Positions 600-36,360 of a DNA stretch of 64,000 nucleotides are shown in pieces. The position numbers and the translations under genes are program-made. This stretch comes from Ylistrum balloti (taxonomy: Eukaryota), in the NCBI RefSeq assembly GCF_031769215.1, contig NW_026782025.1, positions 1 to 64,000 of the forward strand, given 5' to 3'. A model generated the notes under the pieces. The model worked only from the letters and a program-made list of their open reading frames with translations, was not told the DNA's origin and ran no database searches. Positions within the stretch are counted from its first letter, which is position 1. The number at the start of each line of letters is the position of its first letter.

Positions 600-1410
600 C
601 ATTACATGACATTCGATTGGTAATTGGAAATGATTTTCAACACTATTATCTCTGATTTGCATGCGTAATCCTTGTCGGAGATTACATATGACGTCAATGA
701 CTCCGCGACATGTCGTACAAATTACATCTGGAACAGGCCTAGGTAACAAAGATTACGTAAGATTGCACCAAGGTATGTTCAGAATTATCTGTTTGTTTCC
801 GTCTATATAAATCAAAATGGGGGATAATCTAATTGGGAATTGATGTTGCTGCTGAATATCATGATTGTCGCAAATCGTATCGGCGACGTATACTAATATG
901 CCAATGTATAAAAATGATGTAAGGTTGCAAAATCGCATCACCATAAATTCATTCTTTAATTAAGGCATAAAATAATATCAATGGTAAGATGTTGAAAAAA
1001 GCTCTTGAATACAATTATTGAAAGCGGGCGCACTCACGAATAAAATGCTCCGACATATATACGCAGAAAGACTCGTGCTACACACTTACACCCACACACA
1101 CAAAGAATCGTGTTGGCATCCTTCAATAACAAACACATGTAAGGTATCAAAGTGTATAACACCGAAAGCAATTTGTTTAAACTCGTGCTGCATCTCTTTT
1201 AACTTATATGTAGATTGTACACCGAACAGCGACAATGTCGTGCAAAATTTAGCAGTTGTTTTACGACACGAGAGAAGTAGACAATACATCCCAGTTAACT
1301 TATGCATGGCTGTACCAGACAGCACAAAAGCTAGACGTGGCGGAAATAATTTAGGAAGTGCAGACAGACTATTAGATGATGGCGTGACCTGTCTCATTGT
1401 CAACAATCAC
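600..1410 (-). mobile_element. Degenerate reverse-transcriptase fossil of a Penelope-like element (Naiad-type), split over several frames
   Basis: Three consecutive minus-strand ORF pieces fall in RT order. 1086-1406 has LPKL...KFCTTLSLFGVQSTYKLK...IHFDTLH, resembling PKLHK...KYCDT..SGVN.MWILK...FDFSTLY. 753-944 has FL..ILVYV....QQ..QFPI..SPIL, resembling motif B QQ..GIPMG..APLL. 492-749 has TCRGVIDVI, resembling TFRYIDDVL. Alignment is by eye to a remembered consensus; boundaries are approximate. Confidence 0.5.
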
Positions 1411-4846: not shown

Positions 4847-5910
4847 CTTTGAACCGAGTCCATGACTAATGTAAATTCCGGACATCTTTGAACCGAGTCC
4901 ATGCCTACTGTACATTCCGGTGTGTTTCACTCTTCATGGACACCTTTGAACCGAGTCCATGCCTACTGTACATTGAACCGAGTCCATGCCTACTGTACAT
5001 TCCGGAGTGTTTCACTCTTCATGGACACCTTTGAACCGAGTCCATGCCTACTGTACATTCCGGTGTGTTTCACTCTTCATGGACACCTTTGAACCGAGTC
5101 CATGCCTACTGTACATTCCGGAGTGTTTCACTCTTCATGGACACATTTGAACCGAGTCCATGCCTACTGTACATTCCGGAGTGTTTCACTCTTCATGGAC
5201 ACCTTTGAACCGAGTCCATGCCTACTGTACATTCCGGTGTGTTTCACTCTTCATGGACACCTTTGAACCGAGTCCATGCCTACTGTACATTCCGGAGTGT
5301 TTCACTCTTCATGGACACCTTTGAACCGAGTCCATGCCTACTGTACATTCCGGTGTGTTTCACTCTTCATGGACACCTTTGAACCGAGTCCATGCCTACT
5401 GTACATTCCGGAGTGTTTCACTCTTCATGGACACCTTTGAACCGAGTCCATGCCTACTGTACATTCCGGTGTGTTTCACTCTTCATGGACACCTTTGAAC
5501 CGAGTCCATGCCTACTGTACATTCCGGAGTGTTTACTCTTCATGGACATTGAACCGAGTCCATGCCTACTGTACATTTGTGTTTCACTCTTCATGGACAC
5601 CTTTGAACCGAGTCCATGCCTACTGTACATTCCGGAGTGTTTCACTCTTCATGGACACCTTTGAACCGAGTCCATGCCTGTACACGGAGTGTTTCACTCT
5701 TCATGGACATTGAACCGAGTCCATGCCTACTGTACATTGTGTTTCACTCTTCATGGACACCTTTGAACCGAGTCCATGCCTACTGTACATTCCGGAGTGT
5801 TTCACTCTTCATGGACACATTTGAACCGAGTCCATGCCTAATGTACATTCCGGAGTGTTTCACTCTTCATGGACACATTTGAACCGAGTCCATGCCTAAT
5901 GTACATTCCG
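4847..5910. repeat. Minisatellite, 58 bp unit, ~19 copies
   Basis: The unit CTTTGAACCGAGTCCATGCCTACTGTACATTCCGG(A/T)GTGTTTCACTCTTCATGGACAC is repeated head to tail. Early copies are near identical; later copies carry small deletions. Confidence 0.98.
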
Positions 5911-6665
5911 TATGTATACATACATTAAATTGACACAATTTTTTATGACTTTATACACAGTCTAATCATTAAAACAAAGTTAATAAAAATCAAACAGACC
6001 CCTAAAACAATTACATGTTGGAAAGGCAATTTCTTTATTTATTGTTTCTTATGCTGGTTTGAGTATTTTTGATTCTGCATTTCAGCGTCAGGTACAGCGC
6101 AAATTACTCAAAAATATCTGTATTATTGAAAAAATAGTACTTTAAGCGACCAGATTTTTTTTCGCCTATTTGTGATAAAACGATGCTTTTCATCTTTGTT
6201 TACGTAAGCGTAGGCAATTAAATACAAATGGCCGATAGCAAAAGTCTGAAAAATGTGTCTTTGTTTTCCACGAGGCTGATGGTATCTGCCTTTATTCTGG
6301 TACAGCAAATAAAAAAGTACGTCTCGTCTTATCCAATCATCTTGTGAAATGTCACTACGGGGCATGACGTCAGCTAATCAACTTTGATCAGATACGCGCT
6401 GGATACCATTGAGATATCAGACTTCAATGTGATTTATATTCACATGTATTATCTGCTGAAGTTTATCAAATGTAATTTTAAAAAGGATATAAATTACAGC
6501 AAATTACCGCATGTTTCATATGTACATATGTTCTTGACGCTCTTTTGAAATGAAAAAAATCAATGAAATTTGCGAATTTTGTCGAAATATAGTGATATGG
6601 CATCTCCTTTATTTAATTTTGAAATTTCTTTCGATCAAGTTTGGTTTTCCTCAGTCGCCTCCAAG

Positions 6666-6830
6666 GTTTAAAAGTCCTAGAAGGATGAAACAGATGTATG
6701 CAGTAATTTATTGATTGGCTCTATTGTATCTGGTTCTGAATTTATCTTCAAAGTTACTAATCACGTGTGTATCTCTTGAAAAGACCCTTCAAGCTGTTAA
6801 AGATATTTCATGTAGAAATGCATATTTAGA
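6666..6830 (+). mobile_element. Copy of dispersed hammerhead-bearing repeat family (core degenerate)
   Basis: AAAAGTCCTAGAAGGATGAAACAGATGTATGCAGTAATTTATTGATTGGCTCTA matches the family consensus. Stem II (GTCCT-AGA-AGGAT), GAAAC and GTA are kept, but CTGATGA is lost. Confidence 0.7.
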
Positions 6831-7392: not shown

Positions 7393-8995
7393 GATAATGT
7401 TTGGAGAAATGTGGTGATGTCGAGACAAAAACGATAATGTTTGGAGAAATGGTAATGTAGAGACAAAGTGATATTGTTTGGAGAAATGGTAATGTAGAGA
7501 CAAAAGCGATAATGTTTGGAGAAATGGTAATGTAGAGTCAAAAGCGATAATGTTTGGAGAAATGGTAATGTAGAGACAAAAGCGACAATGTTTGGAGAAA
7601 TGGTAATGTAGAGACAAAAACGATAATGTTTGGAGAAATGTGGTAATGTACAGACAAAGCGATAATATTTGGAGAAATGTGGTGATGTCGAGACAAAAGC
7701 GATAATGTTTGGAGAAATGTGGTGATGTCGAGACAAAAGCGATAATGTTTGGAGAAATGTGGAGATGTCGGGACAAAAGCGATAATGTTTGGAGAAATAT
7801 GGTGATGTAGGGACAGAAGTGATAATGTTTGGAGAAATGTGGTGATGTTGGAACAAAAGTGATAATATTTGGAGAAATGTGGTGATGTCGGGACAAAAAC
7901 GATAATGTTTGGAGAAATGTGGTGATGTCGAGACAAAAGCGATAATGTTTGGAGAAATGTGGAGATGTCGAGACAAAAGCGATAATGTTTGGAGAAATGT
8001 GGAGATATCGAGACAAAAGCGATAATGTTTGGAGAAATGATAATGTAGAGACAAAAGCGATAATGTTTGGAGAAATGTGGTGATGTCGAGACAAAAGCGA
8101 TAATGTTTGGAGAAATGTGGAGATGTCGGGACAAAAGCGATAATGTGGTGATGTGGAGAAGTGATAATGTTTGGTGAAATGTGGTAGGGACAAAAGTGAT
8201 AATATTTGGAGAAATGTGGTGATGTCGGGACAAAAACGATAATGTTTGGAGAAATGTGTCGATGTCGGGACAAAAGCGATAATGTTTGGAGAAATGTGTC
8301 AATGTTGTGACAAAGTTAAATGTTTCGATGTCGGGACAAAACTGATAATATTTTGAGAAATGTGTTGATGTCGGGACAAAAGTTAAATGTTTCGATATCG
8401 GGACAAAAGTAATAATGTTTGGAGAAATGTGTCGATGTCGGAATGAGAGTGATAATGTTTGGAGAAATGTGTTGATGTTGGGACAAAAGTGATATTGTTT
8501 GGAGAAATATGTCGTTGTCAGGACGAGAGTGATACTATTTGGAGAAATGTTTCGATGTCGGGATGAGAGTGTAATGTTGGTGAAATGTGTCGATGTCGGG
8601 ATGAGAGTGTAATGTTGGTGAAATGTGTCGATGTCGGGATGAGAGTGTAATGTTGGAGAAATGTGTCGATGTCGGGATGAGAGTGTAATGTTGGTGAAAT
8701 GTGTCGATGTCGGGATGAGAGTGTAATGTTGGAGAAATGTGTCGATGTCGGGACGAGAGTGTAATGTTGGTGAAATGTGTCGATGTCGGGATGAGAGTGT
8801 AATGTTGGAGAAATGTGTCGATGTCGGGATGAGAGTGTAATGTTGGTGAAATGTGTCGATGTCGAGATGAGAGTGTAATGTTGGTGAAATGTGTCGATGT
8901 CGGGACGAGAGTGTAATAATGTTGGTGAAAGGTGTCGATGTCGGGATGAGAGTGTAATGTTGGTGAAATGTGTCGATGTCGGGACGAGAATAATG
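7393..8995. repeat. Compound minisatellite, 38-40 bp units, ~40 copies, G-rich/C-poor on +
   Basis: Three unit types follow each other: GATAATGTTTGGAGAAATGGTAATGTAGAGACAAAAGC (38 bp), GATAATGTTTGGAGAAATGTGGTGATGTCGAGACAAAAGC (40 bp) and GTAATGTTGG(A/T)GAAATGTGTCGATGTCGGGATGAGAGT (38 bp). Confidence 0.98.
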
Positions 8996-15481: not shown

Positions 15482-17234
15482 AAGCTATATGACGGAAAGA
15501 ACTACACAAACGTAAACCAATTACCATCCGTAGACTTGGAGTAATATACCTCCATTACAAGAATAGTCAAGTGATATAATGTGTTGACTTTTACAAATGA
15601 ATCCTGAACAATTCAAATCGAACAGATCTGATATAGTCATCAATATCAACGAAAATGGCATATCTTTAGGCGTACATATACAACCAACATTCCGGGCAGG
15701 CTAATACGTGTCCCGGTCTATCCGGGATTACCTCAGTTTGGAGCGTGCAGAACGGAAAGATGGCGCGTTTGACGGACTGTCTGTTCAACAGCAATTAATG
15801 TTAAACGATTGACTTTTTAAAAAAAGAAAATAAATCAGCTTGGTACCCTTTACCTGTCTTTCTTTTTTCTTGACGAATTTCTCCACGTCATACTATAAAA
15901 TCATTGACTTTCGAAGGGGATTTATTTTCAATGATGTTGTGGGTACTCGTAATCCCAGAATTCAAATGTCCATACAATTCAAAAATAAATATAGGTCGAC
16001 TTATTAAGCTATATTTATCAATGAAATCAAGAATTTATAAAATAGCATATTTTGAAAGACCGCGAAATACAGTGTCACGAAAATGTATGATTGTACAATA
16101 ACAATGTTTCATTTAAGGATTCTTCTGTTGTAATAACACTTTGAGAAGGTATGGAAGCGCTTTATTCTAGTTAAACATTGCCTTCCAATAGCGCATACCA
16201 TCTACATACTCGATAAAAGATTAATCAAATCTCCCTACAGTACAACACAGTGTCGAGATCGTGAGACTACTATCAGGACTGTCTTTGTAAAATTAAACAG
16301 AAAAAAACCATTCGGAGTCCGCAAACAGTCAAGAGTTTCTTTTTCAGAATTTAAATGAGCTGAGATTGTAATTTCCGTTTCTTATTTCAACAAAATGATC
16401 GTAATTTATTTTATTCGATCAAACTCGATATACAAGTTAGATAATAAGGAACCGTAGCGCCCTTTTGCATCATTACAGGGGAATAAGGCAACGAACTCCA
16501 GTTATGATATTAAGCTAACAAAACACCAAATTTTTATTTTGTCAGTAATACATATATAACTAATGAAAGACATTTTCAACCTTCAAAGCGCTAGCAAAAA
16601 CCTGCCAGGGCGTCAAGATATATATATACGTAACCAATGTAGCTGTACCTAAATAATGACTGGTTTCCCAGTTTCAATAATTAAATAATTCCTTTCTTAA
16701 TATCTAAATAATAAATAGAGGCAACCAAATGTTTCGTTTCTACAAACAGGAGGGATATATTGCCAGATAAAAGCAAGATCAACAAGTCCATTTGTGCGGT
16801 TAACTACCTAAACACACACTATACCAAATGTAAAATGTTTATTGCATATTATAAGTCCCCTTTCTCGGCAATGTACATATAATGGGATGGCATTGCAAAT
16901 TTAGAAATGTATGTATGAATGCGAGCCCTTTAAAAACTACAAATGAATGAAATATCTAGATTTTCTTTTGTATTACTTTATTATACAAAAGAAAAGATAT
17001 GTAGGAAAAAGTTCATTTGACTATTCAGTTAAATGAAAATAGTGTATATATCTGTCTCCATAGAGTCAGTTTGGTGATAGATTTACAAATTCGAATACTG
17101 TACTTAAAACAAATACCGGTTGAAAAAGAAAAAATCTCAAGAAATACCATCAACATTATCATAATTCAAACTGAAATTCCATTAAAATAGCGCAAAATAT
17201 GAACAAGAGAAAGATTTACACGGAGACTCCTTAA

Positions 17235-18050
17235 AAAAGTACAAGGACAATAAGACCAGGTGTTCCAGGAGAGTGAGCGTCTTCTGCTTCATCGACGACA
17301 CCTGCCATGTAAAACTTTGGTCAATCTAGGTAAGTAATGTCACGTTGTCAAATGAGAACAAGGTATAAAACAACCAAATCAACAGACAAACTAACGAGCA
17401 TCAAATACATTCAAAGAATATAATACATTTCATTGAGATCACTATTGTGACTATAATACTACCCATAATGTTCATCTTTGGAACCCTTTTGTTACGAGTT
17501 TGCCAGTCAGTTGACGACTTCTTGCATGAAAATCGCGATAATGGGAACAGGCATTTGACTAACGAATCAACTGTGAAATGTAAATACCATAGGTTGGAGA
17601 TGCAGGGATATTGCTTTCCAGAAATGGAAAATTCTAAATAGAGAAAGCAAAATCATCACGTTTATCATACAGCTTGATTGAAAGCTGTCCATATTGGTGT
17701 CCATGTAGGGAAAGATCGAGATAAGCGGCTGATGTAAAAGAGTCTGTCGTGTCTTTGATTTCCAGTTCTGGTGGATAAATACGATGAACGTAGTAAATAA
17801 ATGTCTTGTTATTTAAAGACAAAACGTCATCAATATGTCTGAAGGCTTTTTGTAACAAAATATCACACGGAAACGTCTTCATATCCGTTTTGCTTTAGCT
17901 TCCTGGTGCAAAACCTTGACCAGACAATTTATTTGTCGACAGAGGAATAGTTCGATGAACTTTGAAGGAGTCGGTAAGTAACGACAACACTAAAGTATGT
18001 GTAATCAATTATATCGCCGTGTAATTGTCCGAACATTCTCATCAGAGGAA
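17235..18050 (-). mobile_element. 5'-truncated, degenerate Penelope-like retroelement (C-terminal RT, Naiad-type) with 3' UTR
   Basis: The minus strand translates AFRHIDDVLSLNN...IYPPELEIKDTTDS..SAAYLDL...KLYDKRDDFAFSI*NFPFLESNIPASPTYGIYISQLIR*SNACSHYRDF...LTGKLVTKGF. This is the RT palm (YIDD to HIDD) plus the thumb typical of PLEs. The RT runs straight into the 3' UTR motif (17252-17305) with no endonuclease after it. In-frame stops mark it as dead. Confidence 0.85.
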
Positions 18051-18429
18051 GTGTCCAGCACCTCTTGGTGTTCATAAAATTTGTCTGGGCGATACATAAC
18101 ATTCAACCATTCGAGGAGCACGTCTGGCTATGTCGGCTTGTCGCTTGTTTTATATTTGACCTTGGCTATAACTTGTACGGATTATATCCGTTGGTACCAT
18201 GTTTGTAATCTACAAGAAGGCAAAGCTTAAAATCTAATCTAAACATAAGTAAAAAGCATTCTTGTAAGTTGTTGGTTACATATCTACTCATAGCACTGAA
18301 GGTGGTTGTTGCCAGCATAATGGATATGTTGCTTCAACAGCAAGTTTGGCTCGGCAAAAAAATGACCTGTATCAAGTAATTACTTATTTTTGGCAAAATC
18401 AACGTTTTTTCCTTAATTTCAGGTACTCC

Positions 18430-18600
18430 GTGTACATTTCTACATATCTAAAGTCATTATTCACCGTAATCTACATAGGACACACAAGGATATTTGACAT
18501 TTGAATTCAAATAAAGTGTTAGTTAAGGTGTCTGCCAGAAGATAATTGCACTGCATCATACAGCAGTTTCGTCCTTCTAGGAGTACTCATCAGCGATGTT
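18430..18600 (-). mobile_element. Copy of dispersed hammerhead-bearing repeat family (best-preserved ribozyme core)
   Basis: The hammerhead at 18554-18598 is followed on the minus strand by CTTGTGTGTCCTATGTAGA and GATATGTAGAAATG, which match the family body in other copies. Confidence 0.7.
18554..18598 (-). ncRNA. Minimal type I hammerhead ribozyme motif
   Basis: The minus strand reads CATCG-CTGATGA-G-TAC-TCCT-AGA-AGGA-C-GAAAC-TGCT-GTA-TGATG. Both catalytic boxes (CUGAUGA, GAAA) are intact. Stem I is CAUCG/UGAUG, stem II is G-UCCU/AGGA-C with a 3-nt bulge, stem III is AC/GU, and the cleavage triplet is GUA (cut between 18559 and 18558). Confidence 0.75.
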
Positions 18601-19634
18601 AGGTTCCCAGTGTTGAAATCTGGGAATCAAAATGGGAAAATAGCAAAGAAACATTTCATAATAAATCGGTCGGCGTGTATTAAACTGTGTAATTTCATAT
18701 GCATTTCAAATGCAAAAGTAGCAAAAATAACGAATATTTCAGAACATACGGCGGAACATGTTATTTTCTTGACTCCGTTTATGCGCGATTTTCTAATCGG
18801 TAACAGTAAAACACCGGGGAGGTGGTTTCAACGATTTAATTACAATGACACAAAAGTCTATTAACGGTAAAATGTAGCTCTATGACAACAGAGTCGATTC
18901 TATTATCTTGATGTCAAGGCTATTTGCTATCATTTAATAATTTTATTGTTAATGATATTTTAATATGAACATAAATCTGTGTCTGACGATATAATTCGCG
19001 TTTCAATGTTCGTGGTCGGAATGCATAAGAGTCCGACGTATTTATATATAAAGTGCCGATAAATATTATCCCTCAGAAAGTGGCCTTGTCCAGTATTACA
19101 GATTCACCGTGTGCAGAACCAATAACGTGAGCTAAGTAATAGCAAATGACAAATCCACGGGGACCAGAAATCAGACTTAGCGAAGTGGTCGATCTCAATG
19201 ACCAGTTACCAGAGTGTCCGATAGGAACAAACCCGTCAACCAGCAACTATCGACCGAAGTCAAGTGCCGAGTACTCAAATTAATGGGTTACCTAACTGAT
19301 GGCTACAAAGAGGTCCTGTCATTCCACCATCGGACTCCCTTTTATTGGGAATGTCTTCCTGTCTGGAAAGGAGTTTGGCAAGAACCACCCATAAATGTCA
19401 TGTACAGTCCTGTATGTAATACCTCTATGAGTTCTAGATTAAGAACTCTGCCCCTGTCTGAAGACGTATTTGTTCTGTAATCGACCACCTAATGCTCGTA
19501 TCCTTTAGCCTCTTAATTGTTCACTTCTCTGCCGCTGGACTAATATTTTACTACCCTTGACAGCATCTGTATATGACGATCTTAAAGCTCATCCATATTG
19601 ATATATTGAGACATTGGATCTGAAATGTTTGTTA

Positions 19635-23460: not shown

Positions 23461-23686
23461 TTGTTGCAATATAACGATACAGATTAATGATTTTCTATAT
23501 AACGCACCGATGTGTACATGTATCAATATGTAACATCACCACACGAATACAACATGTCTATAAACGAAGATTCCATATATCTTACCAAATCGTTCAGAGT
23601 ACAGAAAGGAAATATATCAAAATTCTGCGGGGCAGGGTTTGATTCATTCGAATAGTGGCACGGTTCAGAATATACACATATGTTCT

Positions 23687-23712
23687 TTGCGTCCTTCTAA
23701 ACTCATCAGACA
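23687..23712 (-). mobile_element. Fragment of hammerhead-bearing family (5' half only)
   Basis: The minus strand reads GTCTGATGAGTTTAGAAGGACGCAAA. CTGATGAG and TAGAAGGAC are kept; GAAA is mutated. Confidence 0.55.
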
Positions 23713-23794
23713 TATGGAAATTACGAGCATTATCATGTGTCTAGAACACTTCTCTTTCTTGATTTTGACTTTTCTTTCTATGCTTCAAAATTTA

Positions 23795-23915
23795 GGTCCT
23801 TAGCGTAACTGACTAGATGAACGAAATAGCTGTATGATGCAGTTTTATGCATTGTTCGGCTATGCTGTACTTAACTGTAAACTTGTGTCTTTTGTACAAT
23901 CTTTGAGGATATTCT
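23795..23915 (+). mobile_element. Copy of hammerhead-bearing family (core with deletion)
   Basis: TTTAGGTCCTTAG...CTGACTAGATGAACGAAATAGCTGTATGATGCAG...ACTTGTGTCTTTTGTACAATCTTTGAGGAT matches the family consensus. Confidence 0.7.
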
Positions 23916-26226: not shown

Positions 26227-26408
26227 NNNNNNNNNNNNNNNNNNNNNNNNNNNNNNNNNNNNNNNNNNNNNNNNNNNNNNNNNNNNNNNNNNNNNNNNNN
26301 NNNNNNNNNNNNNNNNNNNNNNNNNNNNNNNNNNNNNNNNNNNNNNNNNNNNNNNNNNNNNNNNNNNNNNNNNNNNNNNNNNNNNNNNNNNNNNNNNNNN
26401 NNNNNNNN
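26227..26408. other. Assembly gap (182 N)
   Basis: A run of N; the true size is unknown. Confidence 1.
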
Positions 26409-33425: not shown

Positions 33426-33662
33426 CGTCTGGAGTCGACGCTCGGTCCTTACGGCATGCAACACCATAGTATTCCCCACCACTGTGAGGAGACACAGAAT
33501 TAACAACAGCACCCCCAGGGGAATCTTCCGCCATAATTTGTCTTCCAAAATGTTTTTACTTAATGATGTTGAATTAGAATTATTATACACAAAAGTATCC
33601 CATGGAAAAAGAAAATAGTCCGGAGTTGTTCCGTTAAATTCCAAATAGTAATCATTTGACAT
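33426..33662 (-). CDS. First coding exon (79 aa) of a class A biogenic-amine GPCR, histamine H1 receptor-like
   Basis: It encodes MSNDYYLEFNGTTPDYFLFPWDTFVYNNSNSTSLSKNILEDKLWRKIPLGVLLLILCLLTVVGNTMVLHAVRTERRLQT. There are three N-glycosylation sequons (NGT, NNS, NST) and a hydrophobic TM1 with the conserved GN. ICL1 VLHAVRTERRLQT closely resembles H1 VLYAVRSERKLHT. The ATG is at 33662 with an in-frame TGA upstream (33705-33707); the ORF track's GTG start is not needed. Confidence 0.88.
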
Positions 33663-36209: not shown

Positions 36210-36360
36210 TTTAGGCCCTTGGTATCACGGACGAGGCCTTGATGACGGAACAGCTCTCTATGATGCATTTTAAATATTGATTGGCTCTACCGTGTCTTAC
36301 TTAAATCTGTATTAAGAGGTGCTATTCACTTGTGTGCTTTTGTACGATATTTAAGTATAC
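36210..36360 (+). mobile_element. Copy of hammerhead-bearing family (core mutated)
   Basis: The sequence is TTTAGGCCCTTGGTATCACGGACGAGGCCTTGATGACGGAACAGCT...TGATGC...TATTGATTGGCTCTACCGTGTC...GGTGCTATTCACTTGTGTGCTTTTGTACGAT. Stem I (GTATCA/TGATGC) can still pair. Confidence 0.7.

What the first reader, a model, noticed from the sequence alone, without database searches (positions are those of the whole stretch)
18554..18598. Near-intact minimal hammerhead ribozyme on the minus strand, inside the inferred GPCR intron 1
Seen: CUGAUGA and GAAA cores, stems I-III and a GUA cleavage triplet. Established: minimal type I hammerheads with a very short stem III occur in Penelope-like elements and retrozymes and often cleave as dimers. 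Inference: if intron 1 spans this position, the motif is sense to the GPCR pre-mRNA and could cut it co-transcriptionally. Against activity: a 3-nt insertion creates the palindrome GAGUACUC, which could sequester core residues, and the stem III loop is UGCU rather than the family's palindromic AGCU.
Basis: partly seen in the sequence, partly recalled or inferred. Interest (0 to 1): 0.7.

Follow-up and report, generated by a model that had tools for sequence, protein, structure and literature searches.

The report
Decayed solo Penelope-type hammerhead ribozyme copy
The hammerhead ribozyme motif is really there, but it is one mutated, isolated copy of a very abundant mobile repeat of this genome, and it is most likely a dead transposon relic rather than a switch that cuts a receptor gene's RNA.

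Summary

It is not a chance motif. It is one unit of a 45-nt minimal type I hammerhead family. That family has 2,673 letter-perfect units in this 648-Mb genome, mostly in head-to-tail arrays. In one locus it sits about 540 nt downstream of the end of a GIY-YIG endonuclease ORF of the Penelope-like type.

The window copy is a solo unit inside a roughly 176-bp carrier fragment (18472-18647) that is 72-78% identical to other copies. Its TAC insertion is unique in the genome. Rfam hammerhead models hit the intact siblings but not this copy, even at E<=10. The predicted hammerhead fold loses about 7 kcal/mol. The stem III palindrome needed for dimer cleavage is broken, and the new palindrome competes for core residues.

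The GPCR context is unproven. Only exon 1 (33662-33426, -) is in the window, and the contig ends before any exon 2. No RNA data could be obtained.

Verdict: an ordinary, probably inactive relic. This scan has reported the same family before on other pieces of this genome.

The parts
18553..18599 (-). Solo minimal type I hammerhead unit (47 nt; family units are 44-45 nt). The scissile bond is expected between 18559 and 18558.
   Evidence: Sequence read. Family covariance model R1 scores it 53.3 bits, against 66-76 bits for intact units. No Rfam hammerhead hit at E<=10.
18583..18585 (-). Private 3-nt insertion (UAC on the RNA strand) directly after G10.1 in stem II. It creates the palindrome GAGUACUC (18588-18581).
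   Evidence: It appears as an insertion in the R1 alignment and in the MAFFT alignment with 10 other copies. A genome-wide pattern search finds it only here.
18472..18647 (-). Detectable extent of the carrier repeat: about 45 nt of leader, the hammerhead, and about 82 nt of tail. This is a heavily 5'-truncated copy of the element that carries hammerhead arrays elsewhere.
   Evidence: BLAST to other loci gives 72-78% identity over 96-131 nt. The leader and tail align in MAFFT. Nothing upstream of 18647 is repeated with this family.
6600..6790 (+). Second copy of the same carrier on the opposite strand. It has leader and tail but only the 3' half of the hammerhead (6673-6698).
   Evidence: R1 partial hit of 29.7 bits covering model positions 13-38. 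The sequence shows a family-like leader and tail.
23678..23715 (-). Dead hammerhead relic on the same strand, 5.1 kb upstream. The CUGAUGA box is present, but GAAA and stem III are lost, so it cannot serve as a dimer partner.
   Evidence: R1 scores it 17.8 bits; sequence read.
33426..33662 (-). Candidate exon 1 of a rhodopsin-type receptor: ATG, N-terminal tail with N-glycosylation-like sites, TM1 with a GN motif, ending in RRLQT followed by a gtaagt donor.
   Evidence: Sequence read. Genomic paralogs with 35-40% identity continue into TM2-TM4 with a DRF motif. Pfam finds nothing on this short piece. No other receptor exon is found in the window.
17120..17845 (-). Unrelated 5'-truncated fragment of a very high-copy retroelement (ORF remnant 17634-17882). 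It is not part of the hammerhead carrier.
   Evidence: 75-81% identity to 40 scored copies out of 8,150 candidates. Protein matches at 150 places. No hammerhead lies next to it in 20 other loci.

Best explanation
Window 18553-18599 (-) is a mutated, isolated unit of a genome-wide family of 45-nt minimal type I hammerhead ribozymes. The family belongs to the 3' region of a Penelope-like retroelement lineage and its short non-autonomous (retrozyme-like) derivatives.

In functional family members, units stand head to tail. The palindrome ACAGCUGU of two neighbouring units pairs into a long stem III, giving a double, or circularly permuted type III, hammerhead. That structure presumably processes the multimeric element transcript.

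The window copy arrived as a severely 5'-truncated insertion carrying a single unit. It then decayed by acquiring a private 3-nt insertion next to the G10.1-C11.1 pair. It now has no partner unit, no palindromic stem III, a destabilised stem II, and a new palindrome that can trap core residues G8 and A9. I infer that it is catalytically dead or nearly so and has no role in the surrounding gene.

Shown here: family membership, copy number, the solo and truncated state, the uniqueness of the insertion, the loss of the Rfam score, and the predicted loss of fold stability. Inferred: lack of cleavage in vivo and lack of host function.
For: - Family: more than 100 BLAST matches, mostly in arrays of period 45. 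There are 2,673 exact copies of the 32-nt core + stem II + stem III pattern, against 0 for the reversed control. The first look gave about 405,000 rough candidates, and arrays reach 7 kb.
- Genuine hammerheads: intact units score 32.7-35.8 bits on Rfam RF00163 (gathering score 34). Pairs of adjacent units score up to 48.4 bits on RF00008 (gathering score 48.5).
- The predicted homodimer MFE of the family's majority unit is exactly the double hammerhead, at -30.5 kcal/mol.
- Penelope link: in L074 the end of a GIY-YIG/CCHH endonuclease ORF (PF01541, 33.4 bits) is followed about 540 nt later by a family-like leader, half a hammerhead and a tail. Published work places minimal hammerheads in Penelope-like-element terminal repeats (PMC4209133, PMC8557442) and derives animal retrozymes from Penelope-like elements (bioRxiv 10.64898/2026.07.22.740005).
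- Decay of this copy: flanks are 72-78% identical to other copies. TAC is unique in the genome. There is no Rfam hit at E<=10. R1 scores it 53 bits, against 66-76 for intact units.
- Energetics: the hammerhead fold is -0.3 kcal/mol, against -7.3 for the family and -6.2 with TAC removed in silico. The stem III self-duplex is -3.9 against -13.1, and the GAGUACUC self-duplex is -12.2.
- Literature: a single minimal hammerhead showed no detectable cleavage, and even dimers cleaved poorly in vitro (PMC4209133; reviewed in PMC6765202).
- Relics of the family lie on both strands of this window, as expected for random insertions.
Against: - No cleavage assay and no RNA data exist.
- All 13 invariant core nucleotides and the GUA site are intact.
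- Nearest-neighbour energies ignore hammerhead tertiary structure, and bulges in stem II occur in some natural Penelope-type variants. The D. virilis motif has a bulged nucleotide in helix II (PMC4209133).
- A hetero-dimer with abundant family transcripts would pair 7 of the 8 stem III positions (my own pairing by hand, not computed).
- The Penelope link rests on one locus with a half-deleted ribozyme.
Confidence: 0.85

Rival explanations
1. The motif is an active, sense-strand intronic ribozyme that cuts the pre-mRNA of the receptor gene co-transcriptionally and so lowers or gates its expression.
For: It is on the same strand as the candidate exon 1 at 33662-33426 and 14.8 kb downstream of its donor. 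The core nucleotides and the GUA site are intact. Functional intronic hammerheads are known in amniotes (mentioned in PMC7229834).
Against: - No exon 2 lies between exon 1 and the contig end, so the intron is unproven.
- No Rfam hammerhead hit, including the intronic HH9/HH10 models.
- It is a solo unit of a class that needs dimers (PMC4209133).
- A private insertion destabilises stem II, and stem III is not palindromic.
- It is one of thousands of copies, and other relics in the same window lie on the opposite strand.
- The flanks are decayed.
Confidence: 0.04
2. The copy is inactive on its own but is cut, or guides cutting, in trans by pairing through stem III with abundant transcripts of intact family units. 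Host transcripts that carry relics would then be collateral targets.
For: The window stem III strand can pair with the family palindrome at 7 of 8 positions (by inspection). The family is very abundant. Related mollusc retrozyme RNAs can reach high levels (PMC7229834).
Against: The stem II bulge next to the core remains in any dimer. The GAGUACUC palindrome competes at -12.2 kcal/mol. No expression data exist for this genome. Cleavage by Penelope-type dimers is weak even in cis (PMC4209133).
Confidence: 0.06
3. It is a chance juxtaposition of CUGAUGA and GAAA boxes with fortuitous pairing, not a ribozyme-derived sequence.
For: The loose pattern is expected 0.44 times per window, and 21 of 100 shuffles have at least one match. 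The fold z-score of the region is only -0.41.
Against: The family covariance model gives 53.3 bits, E 2e-14. Identity to more than 100 units is 84-90%. The leader and tail are homologous.
Confidence: 0.01

Closest known systems
Minimal hammerhead ribozymes of Penelope-like elements (Cervera and de la Pena 2014, PMC4209133; Lunse, Weinberg and Breaker 2017, cited in PMC6765202)
   Same: Type I topology, a 1-2 bp stem III capped by a short loop that is palindromic in the family, and predicted action as dimers. Copy number is massive, and units occur both in tandems and as dispersed truncated copies. The family sits downstream of a GIY-YIG ORF (L074).
   Different: The window copy is solo, has a private 3-nt bulge in stem II and a non-palindromic loop III, and fails the Rfam models. 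Elsewhere the family forms long arrays in which the whole 45-nt repeat unit is the ribozyme.
Metazoan non-LTR retrozymes (Cervera and de la Pena 2020, PMC7229834; Li, Clavereau and Pollet 2026 preprint, 10.64898/2026.07.22.740005)
   Same: Short non-coding carriers with type I hammerheads, low GC, repeats a few hundred bp apart (for example hammerhead blocks 340-400 bp apart), present in bivalves, and derived from Penelope-like terminal repeats.
   Different: No circular RNA or expression evidence was obtained here. The window copy is a single fragment of about 176 bp, not a tandem unit, so it cannot be excised by two cuts.
Conserved intronic hammerheads of amniotes (Rfam HH9 and HH10)
   Same: The location is claimed to be in the sense strand of an intron.
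   Different: Those are single-copy, ultraconserved, stable monomers with loop-loop contacts. This one is a decayed repeat copy, has no Rfam hit, and lies in an unverified intron.

Membership tests
Hammerhead ribozyme, type I (Rfam RF00163 / clan CL00010) | Conserved core: C3 U4 G5 A6 N7 G8 A9, then G12 A13 A14, the A15.1-U16.1 pair, and H17 at the cleavage site | tested here: met
   CUGAUGA at 18593-18587, GAAA at 18570-18567, and GUA ending at 18559. These columns are invariant in 50 siblings.
Hammerhead ribozyme, type I (Rfam RF00163 / clan CL00010) | Three helices around the core, with an uninterrupted stem II starting at G10.1-C11.1 | tested here: not met
   Stems I (5 pairs) and III (2 pairs) form. 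Stem II has a 3-nt bulge directly after G10.1. The enforced hammerhead fold is -0.3 kcal/mol, against -7.3 for the family.
Hammerhead ribozyme, type I (Rfam RF00163 / clan CL00010) | Score at or near the curated covariance-model threshold | tested here: not met
   No hammerhead model hits at the gathering score or at E<=10 in 601 bases. Intact sibling units reach 32.7-35.8 bits (gathering score 34) and 48.4 bits on RF00008.
Hammerhead ribozyme, type I (Rfam RF00163 / clan CL00010) | Site-specific self-cleavage | not testable with these tools
   This needs an in vitro transcription assay or RNA-end mapping.
Penelope-like-element / retrozyme minimal hammerhead repeat | Homology of the ribozyme and of its flanking carrier sequence to a multi-copy family | tested here: met
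   R1 scores it 53.3 bits. The leader and tail are 72-78% identical to other copies. The genome holds 2,673 perfect units.
Penelope-like-element / retrozyme minimal hammerhead repeat | Family linked to an RT plus GIY-YIG element, with the hammerhead in the terminal repeat or 3' region | tested here: inconclusive
   One locus (L074) has a GIY-YIG/CCHH ORF end followed about 540 nt later by a family-like leader, half a hammerhead and a tail. The RT part could not be fetched. Most arrays examined have no long ORF within 10 kb.
Penelope-like-element / retrozyme minimal hammerhead repeat | A second unit nearby and a palindromic stem III, so that an active dimer can form | tested here: not met
   It is a single unit. 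The nearest same-strand relic (23678-23715) lacks GAAA and stem III. The stem III self-duplex is -3.9 against -13.1 kcal/mol.
Functional intronic hammerhead | Lies in a verified intron, sense to the gene | tested here: inconclusive
   A same-strand exon 1 candidate exists, but there is no exon 2 before the contig end and no RNA data.
Functional intronic hammerhead | Conserved at the orthologous site in other species | not testable with these tools
   The genome has no relatives in the searchable collections (notice).

The most novel reading that the evidence does not exclude
Despite its stem II bulge, the copy might keep residual activity when it pairs through stem III with abundant transcripts of intact family units. 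If so, a very long first intron of a receptor gene would be nicked in a way that depends on how strongly the repeat family is expressed. That would be a transposon-driven, trans-acting brake on host genes that carry sense relics.
Probability: 0.04. Interest if true: 0.55.

Novelty: new member of a known kind. Interest (0 to 1): 0.12.

Why it matters
This finding matters little on its own. It adds one decayed copy to a class of minimal hammerheads that Penelope-like elements and their retrozyme derivatives are already known to scatter through animal genomes.

Its use is as a calibration point. A motif can keep every core nucleotide of a ribozyme and still be a relic, and here the genome supplies thousands of intact siblings as a direct control.

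If the copy did cleave, it would be an example of a transposon relic controlling a receptor gene from inside an intron. Nothing found here points that way.

Tried and rejected
- Rfam scan of the whole window at gathering scores and of 18300-18900 at E<=10: no hammerhead hit. The three weak hits (CRISPR-DR51, Yar_2, DLEU2_4) are chance.
- MFE folding of 18548-18604: z = -0.41, and the MFE structure pairs CAUC with the GAUG of the core. It is uninformative by itself.
- Covariation in the family: there are no compensatory changes. The family is too young and too similar, so structure support comes from Rfam scores, not from covariation.
- Search for a long RT ORF beside six arrays: none within 10 kb. 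Homology between loci extends only about 100-260 nt upstream and about 100 nt downstream of the arrays.
- A 755-aa GIY-YIG ORF (L067) turned out to be a different element with a telomere-repeat-like tail and no hammerhead.
- Tested whether the RT-like fragment at 17120-17845 belongs with the hammerhead: rejected, because no hammerhead lies next to it in 20 other loci.
- Motif and tblastn searches for further receptor exons in the window: none found.
- The bacterial promoter/terminator scan is irrelevant for this eukaryotic sequence.
- The N run at 26227-26408 was left untouched.

Full report
**1. Observation**

The minus strand of window 18553-18599 reads as a type I hammerhead.
- Stem I pairs CAUCG (18598-18594) with UGAUG (18558-18554): four Watson-Crick pairs and a G.U pair next to the core.
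- The boxes are CUGAUGA (18593-18587) and GAAA (18570-18567).
- Stem II is closed by G10.1 (18586) and C11.1 (18571), with UCCU/AGGA and loop AGA. It is interrupted by UAC (18585-18583).
- Stem III has two pairs and loop UGCU (18565-18562).
- The triplet GUA ends at 18559, so the scissile bond lies between 18559 and 18558.
- The palindrome GAGUACUC (18588-18581) is real.

A loose pattern alone would not be significant: 1 match against 0.44 expected. The fold of the region is unremarkable (z = -0.41).

**2. What it belongs to**

A BLAST search of the window's own 648.5-Mb assembly with 18450-18720 (-) gave more than 100 matches to the roughly 50 nt of the motif. Most sit in head-to-tail arrays with a period of exactly 45 nt, such as L002 480-1550 and L019 830-1700.

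Fifty distinct units align without gaps (A1). All core positions are invariant, the core box is mostly CUGACGA, and loop III is mostly AGCU, which makes ACAGCUGU a palindrome.

Copy numbers:
- An exact 32-nt pattern covering the core, stem II and stem III occurs 2,673 times, against 0 for the reversed control.
- A covariance model of the unit (R1) raised about 405,000 rough first-look candidates.
- Arrays reach 7 kb, for example C48:1206572-1213602.

Rfam recognises these units as genuine hammerheads.
- RF00163 (type I) scores single units at 32.7-35.8 bits, with a gathering score of 34.
- RF00008 (type III) scores the circularly permuted form that spans two adjacent units at up to 48.4 bits, with a gathering score of 48.5.
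- In the permuted form, stem III is the palindrome shared by neighbours, and stem I is closed by a UAG loop.

ViennaRNA predicts the double hammerhead as the MFE homodimer of the majority unit, at -30.5 kcal/mol. There is no compensatory covariation. The family is simply too uniform.

**3. The carrier**

Arrays are flanked by a conserved leader of about 100-260 nt and a tail of about 100 nt.

The window copy has both. Its detectable homology runs from 18647 to 18472, at 72-78% identity to other solo copies. Nothing further upstream is repeated with the family. It is therefore a severely 5'-truncated single-unit copy.

A second carrier copy lies at about 6600-6790 on the plus strand and retains only the 3' half of the ribozyme. 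Weaker relics lie at 23678-23715 (-), 23803-23840 (+) and 36222-36266 (+). Copies on both strands of a single 64-kb window are what random insertion predicts.

**4. Link to Penelope-like elements**

Of ten regions fetched downstream of GIY-YIG hits, two gave R1 matches below E = 0.1, both hammerhead-like.
- L074 (C238) carries the end of a GIY-YIG ORF with the CCHH motif (PF01541, 33.4 bits). About 540 nt further on the same strand it has a family-like leader, the 5' half of the same hammerhead (R1 30.8 bits), and a family-like tail.
- L076 carries a different hammerhead about 760 nt after another GIY-YIG domain.

This matches the literature.
- Minimal hammerheads sit in the terminal repeats or 3' ends of canonical EN+ Penelope-like elements (PMC4209133, PMC8557442).
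- Animal retrozymes are proposed to be non-autonomous derivatives of those repeats (bioRxiv 10.64898/2026.07.22.740005).
- Bivalve retrozymes of 350-390 bp are documented (PMC7229834).

I could not fetch the RT part of L074, so I rate this link as probable, not proven.

**5. State of the window copy**

- The TAC insertion is absent from every aligned copy. It is unique in the genome.
- The G.U pair next to the core and the UGCU loop are subfamily traits shared with other units.
- R1 scores the copy at 53.3 bits, against 66-76 bits for intact units.
- Rfam gives no hammerhead hit at the gathering score or at E<=10 in a 601-base search.
- The enforced hammerhead fold is -0.3 kcal/mol. The family majority unit gives -7.3, and the window copy with TAC removed in silico gives -6.2.
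- The stem III segment self-pairs at -3.9 kcal/mol, against -13.1 for the family palindrome. The new GAGUACUC palindrome self-pairs at -12.2 and includes core residues G8 and A9. The predicted homodimer of the window copy is not a double hammerhead.
- Published assays found no detectable cleavage for a single minimal Penelope-type unit and only weak cleavage for dimers (PMC4209133; PMC6765202).

**6. Gene context**

A convincing exon 1 of a rhodopsin-type receptor lies on the same strand at 33662-33426. It has an ATG, a glycosylation-rich tail and TM1, and it ends in RRLQT followed by gtaagt. Paralogs elsewhere in the genome continue into TM2-TM4.

Neither motif scans nor tblastn with the paralogs find any further receptor exon between 33426 and position 1. 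Position 1 of the window is also position 1 of contig C168. An intron spanning 18.5 kb is therefore possible, but it would have to exceed 33 kb and cross the contig end.

The N run at 26227-26408 was left as it is.

**7. Neighbourhood**

The ORF remnant at 17634-17882 belongs to a 5'-truncated fragment (17120-17845, -) of another, extremely abundant retroelement: 8,150 candidates, with copies 75-81% identical. It never sits next to a hammerhead in other loci. Pfam is blank for it. The nearest protein-atlas clusters carry PF26215 HTH_animal, which is a lead only.

**8. Verdict**

The interpretation as a Penelope/retrozyme-type minimal hammerhead is right. The functional reading, co-transcriptional cutting of a receptor pre-mRNA, is unsupported and unlikely.

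The copy is best explained as a decayed solo relic (confidence 0.85). Earlier notes of this scan on other pieces of the same genome reached the same view of this family. I treated them as leads and re-derived the points above independently. One note calls the organism a scallop; I did not verify that.

Noticed in passing
L002:480-1550, L019:830-1700; G000:C48:1206572-1213602: Long arrays in which the whole 45-nt repeat unit is a hammerhead. Each pair of neighbours also forms a circularly permuted type III hammerhead that nearly reaches the Rfam RF00008 threshold (48.4 bits against 48.5). The genome holds 2,673 letter-perfect units. Such arrays should self-process into 45-nt pieces if they are transcribed.
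   Followed up: partly
window 17120-17845 (-), ORF remnant 17634-17882: A 5'-truncated fragment of a very high-copy retroelement, with 8,150 first-look candidates. Its product has an RHIDDVLSL motif and a C-terminal part that Pfam does not recognise. The nearest protein-atlas clusters carry PF26215 HTH_animal.
   Followed up: partly
window 6600-6790 (+): A second copy of the hammerhead carrier, with leader and tail. The 5' half of the ribozyme (stem I strand and CUGANGA box) is deleted.
   Followed up: yes
window 4973-5910 and 7393-8989: Two satellite blocks flank the second carrier copy. One has a 58-nt period (16.6 copies, 93% matches). The other has a 38-40-nt period (about 40 copies in two sub-arrays).
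   Followed up: no
window 33426-33662 (-): An orphan-looking first exon of a rhodopsin-type receptor, whose closest paralogs resemble amine or muscarinic-type receptors. No later exons lie before the contig end. A paralog lies on the same contig at C168:287373-287537 (+).
   Followed up: partly
L067 (G000:C129:48000-52500): A 755-aa ORF with a GIY-YIG domain, followed by a tail of telomere-like AACCCT repeats and no hammerhead. The same ORF occurs five times about 5.3 kb apart on C422. It may be a separate Penelope-like lineage.
   Followed up: no
L076 (G000:C977:346200-348600), 1321-1367 (-): A hammerhead of different sequence, with its core and a GUA site intact, about 760 nt downstream of another GIY-YIG domain. 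It appears to be a second Penelope-type hammerhead lineage in this genome.
   Followed up: no
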